The notes beneath the pieces are model-generated. The model saw only the letters and a list, made by a program, of their open reading frames with translations. It was not told the origin of the DNA and searched no databases. A stretch of DNA of 64,000 nt, taken from IMG/VR virus record IMGVR_UViG_3300024502_000010, positions 62,001-126,000 of that record; one strand, given 5' to 3'. This document shows, one piece after another, positions 19,606-64,000 of this stretch. Position numbers and translations under genes: made by a program. Numbering within the stretch: position 1 is the stretch's first letter; the number at the start of each line of letters is the position of its first letter.

Positions 19606-20868
19606 TTATCTATTACCATACATGTCTGCACATGCATTATAAACTTTGTAGAATTGATACTGATTAGTTGAAGTTAGACCGTATCTATACCAATCAGCAA
19701 ATTTCATAGTATTAATCATTCTACTATCAACTTGAATATATGGATCAGAAAAAGTAGATGATAAATTATAGAATTTATTTTGGTCATACATCCAAAAAAT
19801 ACCACCAGTATTTGTCCAATAGTATGATGTTGCAACTTGCATGACAACATAAGTTGTTTGTGCTGGAATTGTAATGTTTGCCGACCAAGTAAGTCCGTAA
19901 CTACTATTACCAGTTCTTTGCCCAAGATTTGTCCAAGTACCAGATGTTACTCCACTATAAGTTCCGTTTTGTCCCGGAGAATATACCCACAAAGAACTTC
20001 CATCATGTCCAGATGACCAATATGATGAATGCATTCCATAAATTGTAATTGTCTTAGAAATGTTGGAATGATTACGAATTGGCATCATTAAGATGCTTAC
20101 GGGGTTGTAAGAAGTACTGTTTGGATATGCTCCTGATAGAGCTTGAGAACCTATATTATTCCCAGTCACATTCATCTGCTGTCTAGTGAGAGGATAATTT
20201 TGTCCAGTATCTCCATAATTATAAGTACTATCATTTACTCTTGGGATAAATCCTAAACCAAACCAAGACCACTGTTCGGCATCAGACTGTCCATTGGCAC
20301 CATATGCACGAAGATCGCTGACCAATGGACCAGCAGCTACAGCAGGACCATTAGTTGCCCAACCATTCAGAGTATTTTGTCTTGCATTAATACTATAGAT
20401 TGCCGAAATACTTTTTCTTGTTCCGCCAAAAATCTGCTCAAGAGAGTTATAATCGGCAGATGTGACTGGTTGCCAAGTTTGATCACCTCTTAAGAAAGTT
20501 CCTGAGTTAGCAGTACCTGATGCTAATCTTGCAGTTGGTATTGTACCAGAACTAAGATTTCCTGCATTAAAAAATATCGAACTATCATATCCATCAAGTA
20601 AATCTGCATTCAGATTGTTTACTTTAGTTGTAGATGAAACTGTAAATGGCGCGGTGCCTGAAGCAGTATTTGATGTAAAAGTAGGTGCAGTAATAGTACC
20701 ACTAGAAACGGTAAATCCCGAGGGGAAATTGGCTGAAGAAAGAGTTGTAATTCCAGTTACATTCAGATTTCCTTGAACAGTAATGCTACCCGTAGATGTC
20801 AAAGCAGGAACAGTAGGTCCACCTGTCCCTAATCTATTTGCAATATTATCAACATTTAGTTGAGACAT
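19606..20868 (-). CDS. Tail-fibre/fibre-like virion protein
   Basis: MSQLNVDNI.NRLGTGGP start, LNADLLDG and GTANSGTFLRGDQTW fibre motifs, Ser/Thr/Gly-rich. Confidence 0.7.
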   Translation of the reverse strand: MSQLNVDNIANRLGTGGPTVPALTSTGSITVQGNLNVTGITTLSSANFPSGFTVSSGTITAPTFTSNTASGTAPFTVSSTTKVNNLNADLLDGYDSSIFFNAGNLSSGTIPTARLASGTANSGTFLRGDQTWQPVTSADYNSLEQIFGGTRKSISAIYSINARQNTLNGWATNGPAVAAGPLVSDLRAYGANGQSDAEQWSWFGLGFIPRVNDSTYNYGDTGQNYPLTRQQMNVTGNNIGSQALSGAYPNSTSYNPVSILMMPIRNHSNISKTITIYGMHSSYWSSGHDGSSLWVYSPGQNGTYSGVTSGTWTNLGQRTGNSSYGLTWSANITIPAQTTYVVMQVATSYYWTNTGGIFWMYDQNKFYNLSSTFSDPYIQVDSRMINTMKFADWYRYGLTSTNQYQFYKVYNACADMYGNR

Positions 20869-32726: not shown

Positions 32727-32798
32727 AGCCCCCGACTGGATTTGAACCAGCGACCAACGGTTTACAAAACCGTTGCTCTACCACTGAGCTACAAGGGC
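32727..32798 (-). tRNA. tRNA-Thr(UGU), no encoded CCA
   Basis: Cloverleaf; D loop TAGCTCAGTGGTAGAGC; anticodon stem AACGG/CCGTT with TT-TGT-AA loop; GGTTCAAATCC T arm. Confidence 0.95.
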
Positions 32799-33111: not shown

Positions 33112-33195
33112 TAGGGCGAGGGAGACTTGAACTCCCACGGGCATAAGCCCAACAGATTTTAAGTCTGGTGTGTCTACCGATTCCACCACCGCCCC
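33112..33195 (-). tRNA. tRNA-Leu(UAA), no encoded CCA
   Basis: GGTGGAATCGGTAGAC D arm; CT-TAA-AA loop; variable arm GGGC/GCCC; GGGAG-TTCAAGT-CTCCC T arm; discriminator A. Confidence 0.93.
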
Positions 33196-61002: not shown

Positions 61003-61751
61003 ACACCAACTTCCATTTTAGCAAGAATATATTCCTTCACAAATCCAGAGCGAACAATATCATCAACTCCAAATTCAATAATATCAATTGAAGGCATCAC
61101 ACGAAGAACTTTCATGAAGTCAATGATTCCATTCTTCTCATTCGTCTTAATAAGATCAGATTGAGTAGCATCGCCACAGAACATAATCTTACTGTTTTCA
61201 CCTACACGAGTAATTATACTATCAAGTTCATGAAAATTCAAGTTTTGGAATTCATCAACAATCACAATGGCATTATCTAAAGTGGTTCCGCGAATAAAAG
61301 AGGTGCTCCAAAAACTGATCGTTCCCTGAGTTTTAAGATTGCCATAAAGCATCTCAAATGATGCGTCGTCTGGCATTTGGAACATATACTTTACCATATT
61401 CTTATATGGAATCTGATAAAGACTTGACTTGTCTTCATGGTCTCCGGGAAGAAAACCAATCTCACGAGTAGCAACAAGAGACCTTACAATATAAATTTTT
61501 TCGTAAGGACTTCTTTCATCGAGAACATCTTGAAGTGCATTGTAAAGAGTGATAAAAGTTTTACCAGTTCCTGCACATCCATAAGCAACAATATTTTGTC
61601 CCTTCTCATATGCTCCATATAAAAGTTTTTGATTATCAGTAAGAGGTTCAATATCTCTCATCAAATCAAGACCAATTGGTTTCTTGCGTTTCATTTGTTT
61701 TGCAGTCATCCCAACACCAATTGGTTGATCCTCTCTTCTTCTTCTTGCCAT
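60999..61751 (-). CDS. phoH: PhoH-family ATPase
   Basis: G.AGTGKT, RS.V.TREIGFLPG, RG.TLDNA.VIVDE.QN, CGD..QSDL. Confidence 0.95.
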   Translation of the reverse strand: MARRRREDQPIGVGMTAKQMKRKKPIGLDLMRDIEPLTDNQKLLYGAYEKGQNIVAYGCAGTGKTFITLYNALQDVLDERSPYEKIYIVRSLVATREIGFLPGDHEDKSSLYQIPYKNMVKYMFQMPDDASFEMLYGNLKTQGTISFWSTSFIRGTTLDNAIVIVDEFQNLNFHELDSIITRVGENSKIMFCGDATQSDLIKTNEKNGIIDFMKVLRVMPSIDIIEFGVDDIVRSGFVKEYILAKMEVGV

Positions 61752-61764
61752 AAGATTTTAAGAT

Positions 61765-62013
61765 TTAAACGGGTTTTACTTTAGAGCCTGGAACTTGTGA
61801 TGCTTTTTTAAGAACATCATTCCATCCGGGATGAGATTTTTTAAGTCTATCATACACTTCCCCAATATCACCAGATGATGGGCAAGTACTTGGGTCAGAC
61901 CAATCTCTATCCCACTCGGGATTATCTTTTTTCCATTGATCCCAATCATGAACACTGAGAACAACTTCTTTTTGTTCACCAGTTTGTTTATTAATCACTG
62001 GATATGTTGCCAA
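61765..62013 (-). CDS. Conserved cyanophage hypothetical protein (MATYPVINKQTGEQKEV...)
   Basis: 82 aa between thyX and phoH. Confidence 0.7.
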   Translation of the reverse strand: MATYPVINKQTGEQKEVVLSVHDWDQWKKDNPEWDRDWSDPSTCPSSGDIGEVYDRLKKSHPGWNDVLKKASQVPGSKVKPV

Positions 62014-62042
62014 TGTTACACCTCCATTGTATGTAAGGATAT

Positions 62043-62732
62043 TTATTCAATAGTGATGGAAGGTGCATCAACACACTCAGAACACCCTTCACGAGACCAA
62101 CCAAGTGCTTCAGACACTGCAGGAAACTGGCAAGTAAAGATGCAACGAACAAGTTCTGCAATTTCCATGTGTTCCTTCTGTGTACCATGAGCAGAACGAA
62201 GATCAATATAATGAATCCATGACCTTACAGAACCGGTCATATAGAGTCTTGTAGGCGTCGCTAAGGGCAGTACAAACCTTGCACACTCCTTTGCCACACC
62301 CTTCTCTAAAAGGCGGTTATAAAGGCGTAGAGACTGCTCAAAATGAACGCGGATATCTTCTGTCAGTGTCAGTTTCAGATAGTCGGGAATATCATCAATA
62401 GAGTTCTGACGGTTCTTTGTATCTTGGCGGCGCAGTTCAGGCAGAGGAATAGTGCTATTCAGAAGATTTGTATCAGCATATCGTTGCGAAAATTCTTGAT
62501 ATGTAAATGAACGATGGCGAAGAATCTGAGCTGCTAGTCCACGAGTAGTATTGATTTCAACAGTCATTGAAGCTTGTTCAAAGATACTCCAGTGTTGATG
62601 TTGGATGCAATACTTGAGAAGACCAGAAAACTTATCATTATCCTGATTAGCAGGATTACTTACCCGAGCACAATATGCCATATGCTTTTCTGCATCGGGA
62701 GTAACACTAATGAGTTTTACTTCTGGTTTCAT
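62043..62732 (-). CDS. thyX: Flavin-dependent thymidylate synthase
   Basis: HWSIFEQA, QILRHRSFTYQEFSQRY, KECAR.VLP, LR...TQKEH; start at 62732 or 62753. Confidence 0.96.
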   Translation of the reverse strand: MKPEVKLISVTPDAEKHMAYCARVSNPANQDNDKFSGLLKYCIQHQHWSIFEQASMTVEINTTRGLAAQILRHRSFTYQEFSQRYADTNLLNSTIPLPELRRQDTKNRQNSIDDIPDYLKLTLTEDIRVHFEQSLRLYNRLLEKGVAKECARFVLPLATPTRLYMTGSVRSWIHYIDLRSAHGTQKEHMEIAELVRCIFTCQFPAVSEALGWSREGCSECVDAPSITIE

Positions 62733-62742
62733 AAACTCAAAA

Positions 62743-62922
62743 TCATCGTACATCGTATTCATCTTCCTCGTCATAAAATACTTCGTCGTAGTCACTTAAA
62801 AAATTTTTAATTTCTTCATAGACAGGATCTTTAACCTCAGTCTCAGGTTCAATCTCTGCTTTTAAACAATCTACCAGAGACTCAAGGTTTCTGACAATAA
62901 GTTTAAGTTTTTCTCTATCCAT
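62743..62922 (-). CDS. Hypothetical acidic protein (MDREKLKLIVRNLESLVDCLK...)
   Basis: 59-aa ORF by manual translation, directly after the promoter at 62946. Confidence 0.7.
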   Translation of the reverse strand: MDREKLKLIVRNLESLVDCLKAEIEPETEVKDPVYEEIKNFLSDYDEVFYDEEDEYDVR

Positions 62923-62945
62923 TTTTTATAAACCTCGACAAAGGT

Positions 62946-62985
62946 ATTATAGACAAAAAAAGAGGTGGAGTCAAGTCCACCTCTT
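62946..62985 (-). promoter_or_regulatory. Terminator hairpin overlapping a sigma70-like promoter for the thyX-phoH operon
   Basis: AGAGGTGGA/TCCACCTCT stem + T7; TTGACT (62969-62974)-N17-TATAAT (62946-62951). Confidence 0.8.
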
Positions 62986-62988
62986 AAG

Positions 62989-63087
62989 TCATTTTGCTGC
63001 TACCAGAGTAGCAAGAGATGCTTTTTGACGCCTCTCTTCTTTTTGTTTTTGTTCTTTAATGAGTTGAAGAAAGTTTAGTTTTTTCAT
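62989..63087 (-). CDS. 32-aa basic peptide MKKLNFLQLIKEQKQKEERRQKASLATLVAAK
   Basis: ATG overlaps the DUF4278-like stop (TGATG) and the ORF ends at the terminator. Confidence 0.6.
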   Translation of the reverse strand: MKKLNFLQLIKEQKQKEERRQKASLATLVAAK

Positions 63088-63224
63088 CACTTATGCCCCT
63101 CCTTTACAAACTTAACACCACGATAGTTTTCGTTATACTGTTGGGGTTGTTGCATCATTTGCTGTTGATACTCAAGACGCTTTTGCTTGTCGTATTCAAC
63201 ACCGCGATAAACTACTTTTGACAT
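63087..63224 (-). CDS. DUF4278-like peptide (45 aa, two YRGV motifs)
   Basis: MSKVVYRGVEYD...ENYRGVKF; AGGAG RBS; directly downstream of the glutamine-II-like aptamer. Confidence 0.8.
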   Translation of the reverse strand: MSKVVYRGVEYDKQKRLEYQQQMMQQPQQYNENYRGVKFVKEGHK

Positions 63225-63256
63225 TAGGTTTTCTCCTTAGTTTTTAGGTTAAAGAG

Positions 63257-63307
63257 CGTTCCTTCAGTCGGCGTTTCCGTTCGCTATTTGCGAATAGCGA
63301 ATGAACG
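63257..63307 (-). ncRNA. Glutamine-II (Downstream-peptide)-like riboswitch, compact copy
   Basis: CGTTCA-TTCGCTATT(CGCA)AATAGCGAA-CGGAAAC-GCCGAC-TGAAG-GAACG: P1 CGTTC/GAACG, perfect 9-bp P2, CGG/CCG; upstream of DUF4278-like ORF. Confidence 0.8.
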
Positions 63308-63312
63308 AATTG

Positions 63313-63561
63313 CGTTCCGCGTCGGCTTACTTCCGTCCTATTAGGTTTTAGCACTTTACTATGAAATCCTTTCGGAGTTCTAATAACAATCGGTCCTCTA
63401 TCTTTTGAATTACTACATCGTCGTTTTTAACGATGTCCATTAGTTCCATCGCGGTGTCGCAAGAAACTGCAACCTGTTGGATGCTAGATGCTTGTGGCGC
63501 TGAAACGAAGAGGAAAGGAACCCATGCTAAAAGCAAGAGTGCTTTAGTCATAGGATGAACG
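63313..63561 (-). ncRNA. Second, split glutamine-riboswitch-like aptamer whose P2 loop contains ORF 63348-63551
   Basis: 5' half CGTTCA-TCCTAT (63550-63561); 3' half ATAGGA-CGGAAGTAA-GCCGAC-GCG-GAACG (63313-63341). Confidence 0.6.
63348..63551 (-). CDS. 67-aa signal-peptide protein with C-x2-A...E-x-RK...C pattern
   Basis: Hydrophobic N-terminus; same pattern as ORF 17180-17344. Confidence 0.65.
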   Translation of the reverse strand: MTKALLLLAWVPFLFVSAPQASSIQQVAVSCDTAMELMDIVKNDDVVIQKIEDRLLLELRKDFIVKC

Positions 63562-63562
63562 G

Positions 63563-63624
63563 TAGAGGATTATTATACCTCTATTCAACTTATATAGGAA
63601 GTTTTGTGTGTATTTCCTGATACA
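63563..63624 (-). promoter_or_regulatory. Promoter with NtcA-type site
   Basis: TGTA-N8-TACA at 63609-63624; TATAAT 63572-63577 inside a TAGAGG/CCTCTA inverted repeat; weak -35 (TTCCTA). Confidence 0.6.
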
Positions 63625-63629
63625 GTTTT

Positions 63630-63956
63630 CTATCTCTCAATATAACTTAATGTATGATTGGTAGCATAAAGTTGTTGGATAATAATATCACATCCAATCT
63701 TTGGATTACAATCACCACAAGTATAAACATCAACTGCTGCCTTACCTTCTTCTGGCCATGTATGAATGCTGATGTGACTTTCGGACAACAAGCATATTAC
63801 AGTAACTCCTTGTGGTTCAAACTTTTTTGAAATTGTTTGAACCACAGTAGCGCCGCTCGCTGCTGCCGCGTTTTCCAATAAGTCTATAAGACAACGCTCG
63901 TCGTCCAAAAGGACAAACGAGCATCCATACAAATTAAGTAGGTAATGCTTCCCCAT
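63630..63956 (-). CDS. speD: S-adenosylmethionine decarboxylase proenzyme (pyruvoyl-dependent)
   Basis: HYLLNLYGC, FEPQGVT...LSESHISIHTWPE.G.AAVDVYTCG. Confidence 0.92.
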   Translation of the reverse strand: MGKHYLLNLYGCSFVLLDDERCLIDLLENAAAASGATVVQTISKKFEPQGVTVICLLSESHISIHTWPEEGKAAVDVYTCGDCNPKIGCDIIIQQLYATNHTLSYIER

Positions 63957-64000
63957 TACAACGGATTCTCCTCTGCTTCTTTAATTAATGAACTCACAAT
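63956..64000 (-). CDS. 3' end of an upstream ORF (...IVSSLIKEAEENPL*), truncated
   Basis: TAA overlaps the speD ATG. Confidence 0.5.
   Translation of the reverse strand: MVSSLIKEAEENPL

What the first reader, a model, noticed from the sequence alone, without database searches (positions are those of the whole stretch)
63609..63624. Full-consensus NtcA box in front of the riboswitch operon: two layers of nitrogen sensing in a phage
Seen: TGTATTTCCTGATACA (TGTA-N8-TACA) in the short gap after speD, 32 nt upstream of the TATAAT, centred near -51, with a poor -35. Known: GTA-N8-TAC is the cyanobacterial NtcA (2-oxoglutarate sensor) site; canonical activated promoters have N22 to the -10, so this spacing is about one helical turn longer. 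In hosts, NtcA and a glutamine riboswitch jointly control gifB. Inference: the phage reads host 2-OG at transcription and glutamine at translation on one small operon.
Basis: partly seen in the sequence, partly recalled or inferred. Interest (0 to 1): 0.72.

Follow-up and report, generated by a model that had tools for sequence, protein, structure and literature searches.

The report
Conserved NtcA-type box before phage glutamine riboswitch
A cyanophage carries a binding-site motif for the host nitrogen regulator NtcA at a fixed distance upstream of a glutamine-riboswitch operon, and many related phages do too, so these viruses probably read host nitrogen status twice, although the site is not where NtcA normally activates.

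Summary
The motif is real. TGTATCAGGAAATACA lies on the minus strand at 63624..63609, 5 nt after the speD stop and 32 nt before TATAAT. It is the only intergenic GTA-N8-TAC in the window.

One copy is not significant, but conservation is. In samples chosen without regard to the box, 46 of 79 cyanophage riboswitch promoters carry an exact box (shuffles give 1.2). The spacing peaks sharply at N31/32, there are 33 different box sequences, and only the GTA and TAC columns are conserved.

The box does belong to a glutamine-riboswitch operon: tandem aptamers, an IF17-like DUF4278 peptide, then a terminator. Its geometry is not that of an NtcA-activated promoter. It centres near -51.5 from the TATAAT start, or about -33 from a conserved upstream start. 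Most relatives have a near-consensus -35. Host riboswitch genes place their boxes elsewhere.

I judge it an NtcA-type operator, probably dampening rather than activating. Binding and sign are untested.

Sullivan et al. 2010 already list the equivalent motifs in P-HM2 and P-SSM4, without linking them to the riboswitch.

Seen in passing: small ORFs nested inside the aptamers, including this window's ORF67.

The parts
63609..63624 (-). NtcA-type box TGTATCAGGAAATACA (GTA-N8-TAC core 63623..63610)
   Evidence: Read. It is the only intergenic copy in the window. The same box is found at the same offset in relatives.
63595..63600 (-). Degenerate -35 hexamer TTCCTA, 17 nt upstream of TATAAT
   Evidence: Relatives mostly have TTGACT here.
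63589..63597 (-). Conserved CTATATAAG element (CTAAATA or CTATATA in relatives). It is 13 nt after the box and about 7 nt before the hairpin. It is a candidate -10 or late-type promoter for an upstream start.
   Evidence: conserved columns -18..-13. It occupies the same position as the host -10.
63572..63577 (-). TATAAT -10 hexamer
   Evidence: This hexamer was required by the sampling pattern. In the promoter-independent sample, 79 of 107 promoters have it with at most 1 mismatch.
63563..63583 (-). Inverted repeat TAGAGG / CCTCTA that encloses TATAATAAT in its loop
   Evidence: a stem of at least 4 bp in 59 of 65 riboswitch promoters against 14 of 81 controls, with many different compensating stem sequences.
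63313..63561 (-). Glutamine aptamer 1, split. The 5' part is CGTTCATCCTATG and the 3' part is ATAGGACGGAAGTAAGCCGACGCGGAACG. A 217-nt insert sits in the P2 loop.
   Evidence: Compared with the uninterrupted S-PM2 aptamer 1. Found by the pattern. P2 CCTAT/ATAGG has 5 bp.
63348..63551 (-). ORF67 (67 aa, hydrophobic N-terminus, two Cys), nested in the P2 loop of aptamer 1. Its ATG lies in the P2 5' strand.
   Evidence: Homologues occupy the same place in L072, L079, L105 and L110.
63253..63309 (-). Glutamine aptamer 2 (glnA RNA type)
   Evidence: Rfam RF01739, 34.7 bits (cut-off 35), E 1.2e-5. It is 86.8% identical to the riboswitch annotated in phage S-CREM1.
63087..63224 (-). 45-aa peptide gene (MSKVVYRGVEY...), IF17-like DUF4278, preceded by AAGGAG
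   Evidence: Pfam PF14105, E 0.0024, below the cut-off. phrog_5049, E 6.6e-9. PMC6212724 links such peptides to glutamine riboswitches.
62989..63090 (-). 33-aa ORF that overlaps the end of the peptide gene. No family found.
62960..62985 (-). Intrinsic terminator that closes the unit. The next promoter's TTGACT sits in its loop.
63630..63956 (-). speD (S-adenosylmethionine decarboxylase), the upstream neighbour
   Evidence: Pfam PF02675, E 3.5e-35.

Best explanation
The 16-mer is a working protein-binding operator of the NtcA type (GTA-N8-TAC). It belongs to the promoter of a phage nitrogen-sensing unit: promoter, tandem glutamine aptamers (the first split by ORF67), an IF17-like DUF4278 peptide, a 33-aa ORF, and a terminator.

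When host 2-oxoglutarate is high (nitrogen shortage), host NtcA would bind here, while the aptamers gate translation by glutamine.

The site is not in the activating position. It is centred about -51.5 from the start predicted for TATAAT. It is centred about -33 from a second, conserved start just before the hairpin. I therefore think binding most likely dampens or blocks transcription under nitrogen stress. That would keep the host gifB logic: the peptide is made only when nitrogen is plentiful.

Shown: the motif, its conservation, its fixed spacing, and the operon anatomy. Inferred: that NtcA is the binder, the transcription starts, and the sign of the effect. My estimate that NtcA binds at all is about 0.7. 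The confidence given here, 0.45, is for the committed version with a negative or modulating sign.
For: Conservation, in samples chosen without regard to the box:
- 26 of 35 riboswitch promoters have an exact box against 2 of 82 controls.
- 46 of 79 have it against a shuffle mean of 1.2 and a maximum of 6 in 2000 shuffles. There are 33 distinct box sequences, and information peaks only at G-45, A-43, C-41, T-34, A-33 and C-32.
- The offset mode is -45/-46 from TATAAT.
- Named isolates S-PM2, S-RIM32, Bellamy, P-TIM68, S-SM2, P-HM2 and S-CREM1 carry it.

It behaves as a protein site, not a hairpin: the inner positions are complementary in only about half of the 51 boxes.

The half-site flavour GTATC/GTAAC equals that of host amt1 promoters with the canonical N22 layout.

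It is specific to this promoter: only 1 of 41 other sigma-70-like promoters in the phage genome has a box.

For a negative sign:
- Most relatives have the near-consensus TTGACT-N17-TATAAT.
- 71% of NtcA sites of induced genes lie at -41 to -44, whereas sites of repressed genes range from -69 to +83 with a slight accumulation near -30 (PMC5714215).
- Cellular gifB-type riboswitch promoters carry the box over the -10.
Against: - No binding or expression data exist for any of these phage sites.
- A site that ends 8-9 nt upstream of the -35 does not overlap the core contacts of RNA polymerase, so repression from -51.5 would be unusual.
- The upstream start that would put the box at -33 is inferred only from conserved sequence and from the hairpin.
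- The spacing is not absolute: N26-28 in five cases and N40 in two.
- 33 of 79 homologous promoters have no exact box, so it is dispensable.
- This window's own -35 is poor, which fits activator dependence better.
- 12 of 30 marine host riboswitch genes also carry an upstream NtcA-like element at the activating distance, so host logic is not purely repressive.
Confidence: 0.45

Rival explanations
1. One reading: NtcA bound here activates the promoter under nitrogen stress. It would act from one helical turn further upstream than usual, as a class I-like site contacting the alpha subunit. The operon would then need both high 2-oxoglutarate and glutamine.
For: - The box lies upstream of, and does not overlap, the -35 and -10.
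- N32 against N22 keeps the same helical face.
- The window and L105 have a degenerate -35.
- Two relatives have N40, close to the class I position.
- Sullivan et al. 2010 proposed that cyanophages exploit NtcA to drive genes under nitrogen stress.
- Marine host riboswitch genes have an activator-position element.
Against: - Most relatives have a near-consensus -35 and -10 and need no activator.
- Box presence does not go with weaker -35 elements: 1.55 against 1.77 mean mismatches.
- -51.5 lies outside the -41 to -44 cluster of induced genes.
- From memory, CRP does not activate from -51.5.
- No -10-like hexamer sits 22 nt after the box.
Confidence: 0.25
2. The box is bound by another factor, not NtcA. 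Candidates are another host CRP/FNR-family regulator or a phage protein that recognises a similar palindrome.
For: - The geometry fits neither the known activating nor the known repressing NtcA layouts.
- Only six bases define the motif.
Against: - The match to GTA-N8-TAC is exact in 33 different versions.
- The T and A flanks are preferred.
- The same half-site flavour occurs at host amt1 NtcA promoters.
- The nitrogen theme of the operon fits NtcA.
Confidence: 0.15
3. There is no function. The box is a chance match kept by shared ancestry of the promoter region.
For: - One intergenic copy is within chance for this window.
- 33 of 79 relatives lack an exact box.
Against: - The flanking and inner columns have decayed to background, while GTA and TAC stay.
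- 33 different boxes are found.
- Controls give 2 of 82.
Confidence: 0.05
4. The palindrome acts as an RNA or DNA hairpin, for example in read-through transcripts from speD.
For: - In this window TGTAT/ATACA could pair over 5 bp.
- The box-like GTATGCTAACATAC at -19 in P-HM2-type phages, and the host GTAGC-N4-GCTAC, do look like hairpins.
Against: - Inner positions pair in only 24-28 of 51 boxes, with no compensating changes.
- The stems would be AT-rich and very weak.
Confidence: 0.03

Closest known systems
NtcA plus glutamine-riboswitch control of gifB (IF17) in cyanobacteria (Klahn et al. 2018, PMC6212724; Giner-Lamia et al. 2017, PMC5714215)
   Same: A GTA-N8-TAC box and a glutamine aptamer sit on one transcription unit that encodes a DUF4278/IF17-like peptide, giving two nitrogen signals on one gene.
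   Different: In cellular cyanobacteria the box overlaps the -10 or the start: -24 to -31 from the aptamer in 44 loci, or -15 to -21 in marine picocyanobacteria. In phages it sits at -58/-59, upstream of the -35. The phage unit also has tandem aptamers, often with nested ORFs.
Canonical NtcA-activated class II promoter (GTA-N8-TAC, N22, TAN3T; centre -41.5)
   Same: The same recognition motif, with the same half-site flavour as host amt1 promoters.
   Different: The spacing is N31/32, not N22, and a good -35 is present in most relatives. The defining geometry is not met.
NtcA-like motifs catalogued in cyanomyovirus genomes (Sullivan et al. 2010, PMC3037559)
   Same: Their supplementary table lists motifs at P-HM2 160362, 160392 and 160431 and at P-SSM4 165083. 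These coincide, within 1 nt, with the boxes I find upstream of those phages' riboswitches.
   Different: That work is a genome-wide list. It makes no link to the riboswitch, to the fixed spacing, or to the difference from host layouts. The S-PM2 box is not in their list.
Overlapping early and late promoters of T4-like cyanophages (Clokie, Millard and Mann 2010, PMC2984593)
   Same: TTGACT-N17-TATAAT overlaps a CTAAATA/CTATATA element that resembles the late motif NATAAATA.
   Different: The late-type element is one or two mismatches off the consensus. No start site has been mapped here.

Membership tests
NtcA binding site | Sequence GTA-N8-TAC, preferably TGTA-N8-TACA | tested here: met
   TGTATCAGGAAATACA at 63624..63609.
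NtcA binding site | Lies in a promoter region and is kept in orthologous promoters | tested here: met
   26 of 35 and 46 of 79 relatives have it. The offset mode is -45/-46.
NtcA binding site | Bound by NtcA in a 2-oxoglutarate-dependent way | not testable with these tools
   Needs a gel shift, footprint or ChIP experiment.
NtcA-activated class II promoter | Box centred near -41.5, with 22 nt to a TAN3T -10 | tested here: not met
   32 nt to TATAAT here, 31/32 in most relatives, and no -10-like hexamer at N22.
NtcA-activated class II promoter | No functional -35; the box takes its place | tested here: not met
   The window has a poor TTCCTA, but the box is 9 nt upstream of it. Most relatives have TTGACT.
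NtcA-repressed gifB-type promoter | Box overlaps the -35, the -10 or the transcription start | tested here: inconclusive
   Not met for the TATAAT promoter, where the box ends 9 nt before the -35. It is met (centre about -33) only if the inferred upstream start before the hairpin is real.
Glutamine riboswitch, glnA RNA (RF01739) | Match to the covariance model at the curated score | tested here: inconclusive
   Aptamer 2 scores 34.7 bits against a cut-off of 35, E 1.2e-5, over the full model length. It is near-identical to annotated phage riboswitches. Aptamer 1 is split and was recognised only by comparison with S-PM2.
DUF4278 / IF17-like peptide | Match to Pfam PF14105 at the gathering score | tested here: inconclusive
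   18.6 bits against a cut-off of 25.3, E 0.0024. The YRG repeats are present. phrog_5049 matches at E 6.6e-9. The homologue in P-TIM40 is annotated as DUF4278.

The most novel reading that the evidence does not exclude
The unit is a phage-specific two-output nitrogen switch. A repositioned NtcA operator tunes transcription by 2-oxoglutarate. The glutamine aptamers then choose what is translated. With little glutamine the aptamers stay open, and the small Cys-pair proteins nested in their P2 loops are made, because their ATG lies in the P2 strand. With glutamine the aptamers fold, hide those start codons, and release the IF17-like peptide. Protein genes nested inside riboswitch aptamers, some ending within the aptamer core, would be a new coding arrangement.
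Probability: 0.2. Interest if true: 0.85.

Novelty: new variant of a known kind. Interest (0 to 1): 0.6.

Why it matters
Marine cyanophages are thought to exploit the host nitrogen-stress system, but no phage promoter has been tied to NtcA experimentally.

This box gives a concrete and widespread target. It has a fixed geometry, and it sits on a unit that also senses glutamine and encodes a relative of the factor that inactivates glutamine synthetase.

Testing it would show whether phages copy the host logic, invert it, or combine the two signals differently.

The comparison also cautions against reading every GTA-N8-TAC as an NtcA site. The host 'box' at the transcript start, and the -19 box of some phages, look like hairpins.

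Tried and rejected
- The Rfam search at gathering thresholds found no riboswitch. The aptamer appears only at E-value thresholds, 0.3 bits under the cut-off.
- I looked for a -10 hexamer 22 nt after the box, which would rescue the canonical activating layout. None is conserved.
- I tested whether promoters with the box have weaker -35 elements, as activator dependence would predict. They do not.
- I tested whether the box is a general feature of this phage's early promoters. It is not: 1 of 41.
- I tested the RNA-hairpin reading of the box. It is rejected, because the inner positions do not covary.
- Four river metatranscriptome assemblies were laid on 61500-64000.
  - The riboswitch and peptide segment (63097-63441) has the highest word depth in all four runs: about 300-930, against 40-56 downstream in three runs.
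  - These are contigs. They give no transcript ends and can mix strains, so no start site and no nitrogen dependence can be read from them.
- Literature searches found no paper that links NtcA to a phage riboswitch.
- The Syn9 start-site study is not held in the library.
- The excess of GTA-N8-TAC in the window is coding-sequence composition, not regulation.

Full report
**Observation**

All genes at this end of the window run on the minus strand. Read on that strand, speD ends with TAG at 63632..63630. Five bases later comes TGTATCAGGAAATACA (63624..63609). TATAAT follows at 63577..63572, leaving 32 nt between TAC and TATAAT. The hexamer 17 nt upstream of TATAAT is TTCCTA.

The window is bases 62001-126000 of a 204,829-bp virus record. 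Its relatives are T4-like cyanomyoviruses of Synechococcus and Prochlorococcus.

**Is it more than chance?**

GTA-N8-TAC is over-represented in the window: 21 copies against 9.4 expected, and 5 against 1.4 for the 16-mer form. However, 19 of the 21 lie inside ORFs and one lies at a gene start. That excess is best put down to coding composition.

The copy at 63610 is the only truly intergenic one, and about 0.7 would be expected there. In the whole phage genome only 5 of 59 copies are non-coding, and only this one has a promoter context. The single occurrence therefore proves nothing on its own.

**Conservation**

I took two samples of related loci without using the box as a criterion.

Sample 1 came from viral contigs that match TATAAT-N4-12-CGTTCATC.
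- Of 35 hits followed by a glutamine-aptamer signature, 26 have an exact GTA-N8-TAC within 70 nt upstream. Twenty of these start 45 or 46 nt before TATAAT.
- Of 82 hits to the same pattern with no riboswitch, 2 have a box.

Sample 2 came from viral contigs that match only the aptamer core.
- 66 of 111 distinct upstream regions have a box, with a mode 58-59 nt before the aptamer.
- Among the 79 that have a TATAAT-like -10, 46 carry an exact box. Shuffles give a mean of 1.2 and a maximum of 6 in 2000.
- There are 33 different box sequences.
- Column by column, without conditioning on the box, information peaks at G-45, A-43, C-41, T-34, A-33 and C-32, and falls to background between and around them.

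Named isolates with the box are S-PM2, S-RIM32, Bellamy, P-TIM68, S-SM2, P-HM2 and S-CREM1. S-CAM7 lacks it.

The box is not a general feature of this phage's promoters. Only 1 of 41 other sigma-70-like promoters in the genome has one.

The inner positions of the box are complementary in only about half of 51 distinct boxes, with no compensating changes. It therefore behaves as a protein site rather than a hairpin.

Its half-sites (GTATC or GTAAC) have the flavour seen at host amt1 promoters. In Prochlorococcus-sized genomes those promoters show the textbook GTA-N8-TAC, N22, TAAAT layout.

**What the box stands in front of**

Downstream of TATAAT the transcript would begin directly with CGTTCATCC, the 5' strand of a glutamine aptamer.

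In S-PM2 two complete aptamers follow in tandem, and then a short peptide gene. In the window the layout is as follows.
- The second aptamer is intact at 63309..63253. It scores 34.7 bits against RF01739 (cut-off 35), E 1.2e-5.
- The first aptamer is split. Its 5' part (63561..63549) and its 3' part (ATAGGACGGAAGTAAGCCGACGCGGAACG, ending at 63313) are separated by 217 nt. That insert holds ORF67 (63551..63348), whose ATG lies in the P2 5' strand.
- Next come an AAGGAG site and a 45-aa peptide with YRG repeats. The peptide matches DUF4278 weakly (E 0.0024) and phrog_5049 well (E 6.6e-9).
- Klahn et al. call such peptides IF17-like and link them to glutamine riboswitches in marine picocyanobacteria.
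- A 33-aa ORF and an intrinsic terminator at 62985..62960 close the unit.

**Geometry compared with hosts**

In cellular cyanobacteria with the same aptamer type, 49 of 118 loci have a box. In 44 of these it starts 24-36 nt before the aptamer, mostly 24-31 nt, so it lies over the -10: TTGACA, about 13 nt, then GTAACAATAGATAC. This is the known repressing layout of gifB (PMC5714215).

In eight picocyanobacteria-sized genomes, 24 of 30 Glutamine-II riboswitch genes have a perfect palindrome such as GTAGCAACCGCTAC. In 22 of them it lies 15-21 nt before the Rfam model start. Klahn et al. described this arrangement for MED4. Twelve of the 30 also have a GTATC-N5-GAAC element at the activating distance from the -10.

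The phage box matches neither position. It ends 8-9 nt upstream of the -35.

**Position and likely sign**

Relative to a start about 7 nt after TATAAT, the box is centred at about -51.5.

Two further conserved features suggest a second start.
- A CTAAATA or CTATATA element lies 12-13 nt after the box. It sits exactly where host promoters have their -10.
- A covarying inverted repeat encloses TATAAT in its loop. It has at least 4 bp in 59 of 65 promoters, against 14 of 81 controls, with many different compensating stems.

A transcript that starts just before this hairpin would put the box at about -33.

In Synechocystis, 71% of NtcA sites of induced genes lie at -41 to -44. Sites of repressed genes range from -69 to +83, with a slight accumulation near -30.

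Most relatives carry the near-consensus TTGACT-N17-TATAAT, and box presence does not go with weaker -35 elements.

On this evidence the box is not part of a canonical activated promoter. I lean towards a dampening role under nitrogen stress, which would preserve the host logic. The counter-arguments are:
- the site does not overlap the core promoter;
- the window's own -35 is poor;
- two relatives have N40, near a class I position;
- marine hosts have an activator-position element.

My estimates are about 0.7 that NtcA binds, 0.45 for the negative or modulating version, and 0.25 for activation.

**RNA data**

Twenty-four river metatranscriptome runs hold this stretch. In the four I laid, the segment 63097-63441 has the highest assembler word depth. 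It is about 300-930, against 40-56 for the genes downstream in three of the runs.

These are contigs. They carry no ends or direction and may pool related strains. They suggest abundant RNA from the riboswitch and peptide region and nothing more.

**Prior knowledge**

Sullivan et al. 2010 reported 1-16 NtcA-like motifs per cyanomyovirus genome and proposed that phages exploit the host nitrogen-stress response.

Their supplementary table lists P-HM2 positions 160362, 160392 and 160431 and P-SSM4 position 165083. Within 1 nt, these are the boxes I find upstream of those phages' riboswitches. The motif was therefore catalogued in relatives before.

Glutamine riboswitches in cyanophages are also known. 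I found no paper that connects the two, notes the fixed spacing, or contrasts it with the host layouts.

**Verdict**

The 'two layers of nitrogen sensing' reading is plausible and partly supported. The activating mechanism is not supported by the geometry. I rate it a new variant of a known kind, of moderate to good interest, and directly testable.

Noticed in passing
window 63348-63561 (-); also L008, L025, L034, L037, L039, L041, L043, L044, L072, L079, L097, L105, L110, L368 (P-HM2), L369 (P-SSM4) and others: Small ORFs (50-68 aa) are nested inside glutamine aptamers. One search lists 55 aptamers with a long insert, 52 of them with an ORF, and one search counts 57 distinct ORF sequences.
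- A 137-233 nt insert sits in the P2 loop.
- The ATG lies at a fixed offset of +9 to +11 from CGTTCAT.
- Most ORFs end inside the aptamer core. The endings ..WDAND and ..DAKAD are read from the conserved core sequence, with the stop inside it.
- All have a hydrophobic N-terminus and two Cys about 35-45 residues apart.
- In the 53-aa group (12 sequences) pairwise differences per codon position are 0.44, 0.26 and 0.54, which is coding-like.
I found no description of this arrangement in the papers searched.
   Followed up: partly
window 63563-63583 (-) and the same place in 59 of 65 related promoters: The -10 hexamer TATAAT sits in the loop of an inverted repeat whose arms covary (AGGTC/GACCT, TAGAGG/CCTCTA, GTATGG/CCATAC, GGTGT/ACACC and others). 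In P-HM2-type phages the loop is CTAA and the stem happens to read GTATGCTAACATAC. This suggests a hairpin at the 5' end of transcripts that start upstream of TATAAT.
   Followed up: partly
L338-L367 (marine picocyanobacterial genomes G029-G146): The 'perfect NtcA site' at the start of host Glutamine-II riboswitch genes is always a full palindrome whose inner positions covary (GTAGC..GCTAC, GTAGT..ACTAC, GTATC..GATAC). It begins about where yfr6 transcription was mapped, some 20 nt before the motif. It may be a 5' hairpin as much as an operator. Twelve of 30 loci also have GTATC-N5-GAAC at the activating distance from the -10.
   Followed up: partly
L369 (P-SSM4) 20 nt before its first aptamer: P-SSM4 has GTAGCAATTGCTAC directly before the aptamer. 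This is identical to the box of Prochlorococcus-like host loci L347 and L349, so the layout looks host-derived rather than phage-typical.
   Followed up: no
L248, L285, L289, L294, L320 and L003 (S-CREM1): In a minor promoter class the box starts 38 nt before the aptamer, exactly 24 nt from TAC to CGTTCATC. There is no TTGACT/TATAAT pair, only a TATATAAAT-like element. In L289, L294 and L320 the box follows directly on a gene end whose last codons resemble the speD end of this window.
   Followed up: no
window 62946-62985 (-): The terminator hairpin that closes the riboswitch unit carries the TTGACT of the next promoter in its loop (TTGACT-N17-TATAAT, 11 of 12 matches). The same terminator-with-promoter design recurs elsewhere in the genome, for example at genome position 142973.
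   Followed up: no
window 691-60354, 19 sites inside ORFs: GTA-N8-TAC is about twice as frequent as shuffles predict, but nearly all copies are within coding sequence, several of them in one large gene (19606..20868). This is probably a codon and amino-acid effect.
   Followed up: partly
window 32727-32798 and 33112-33195 (-): Two tRNA genes, found by the Rfam scan.
   Followed up: no
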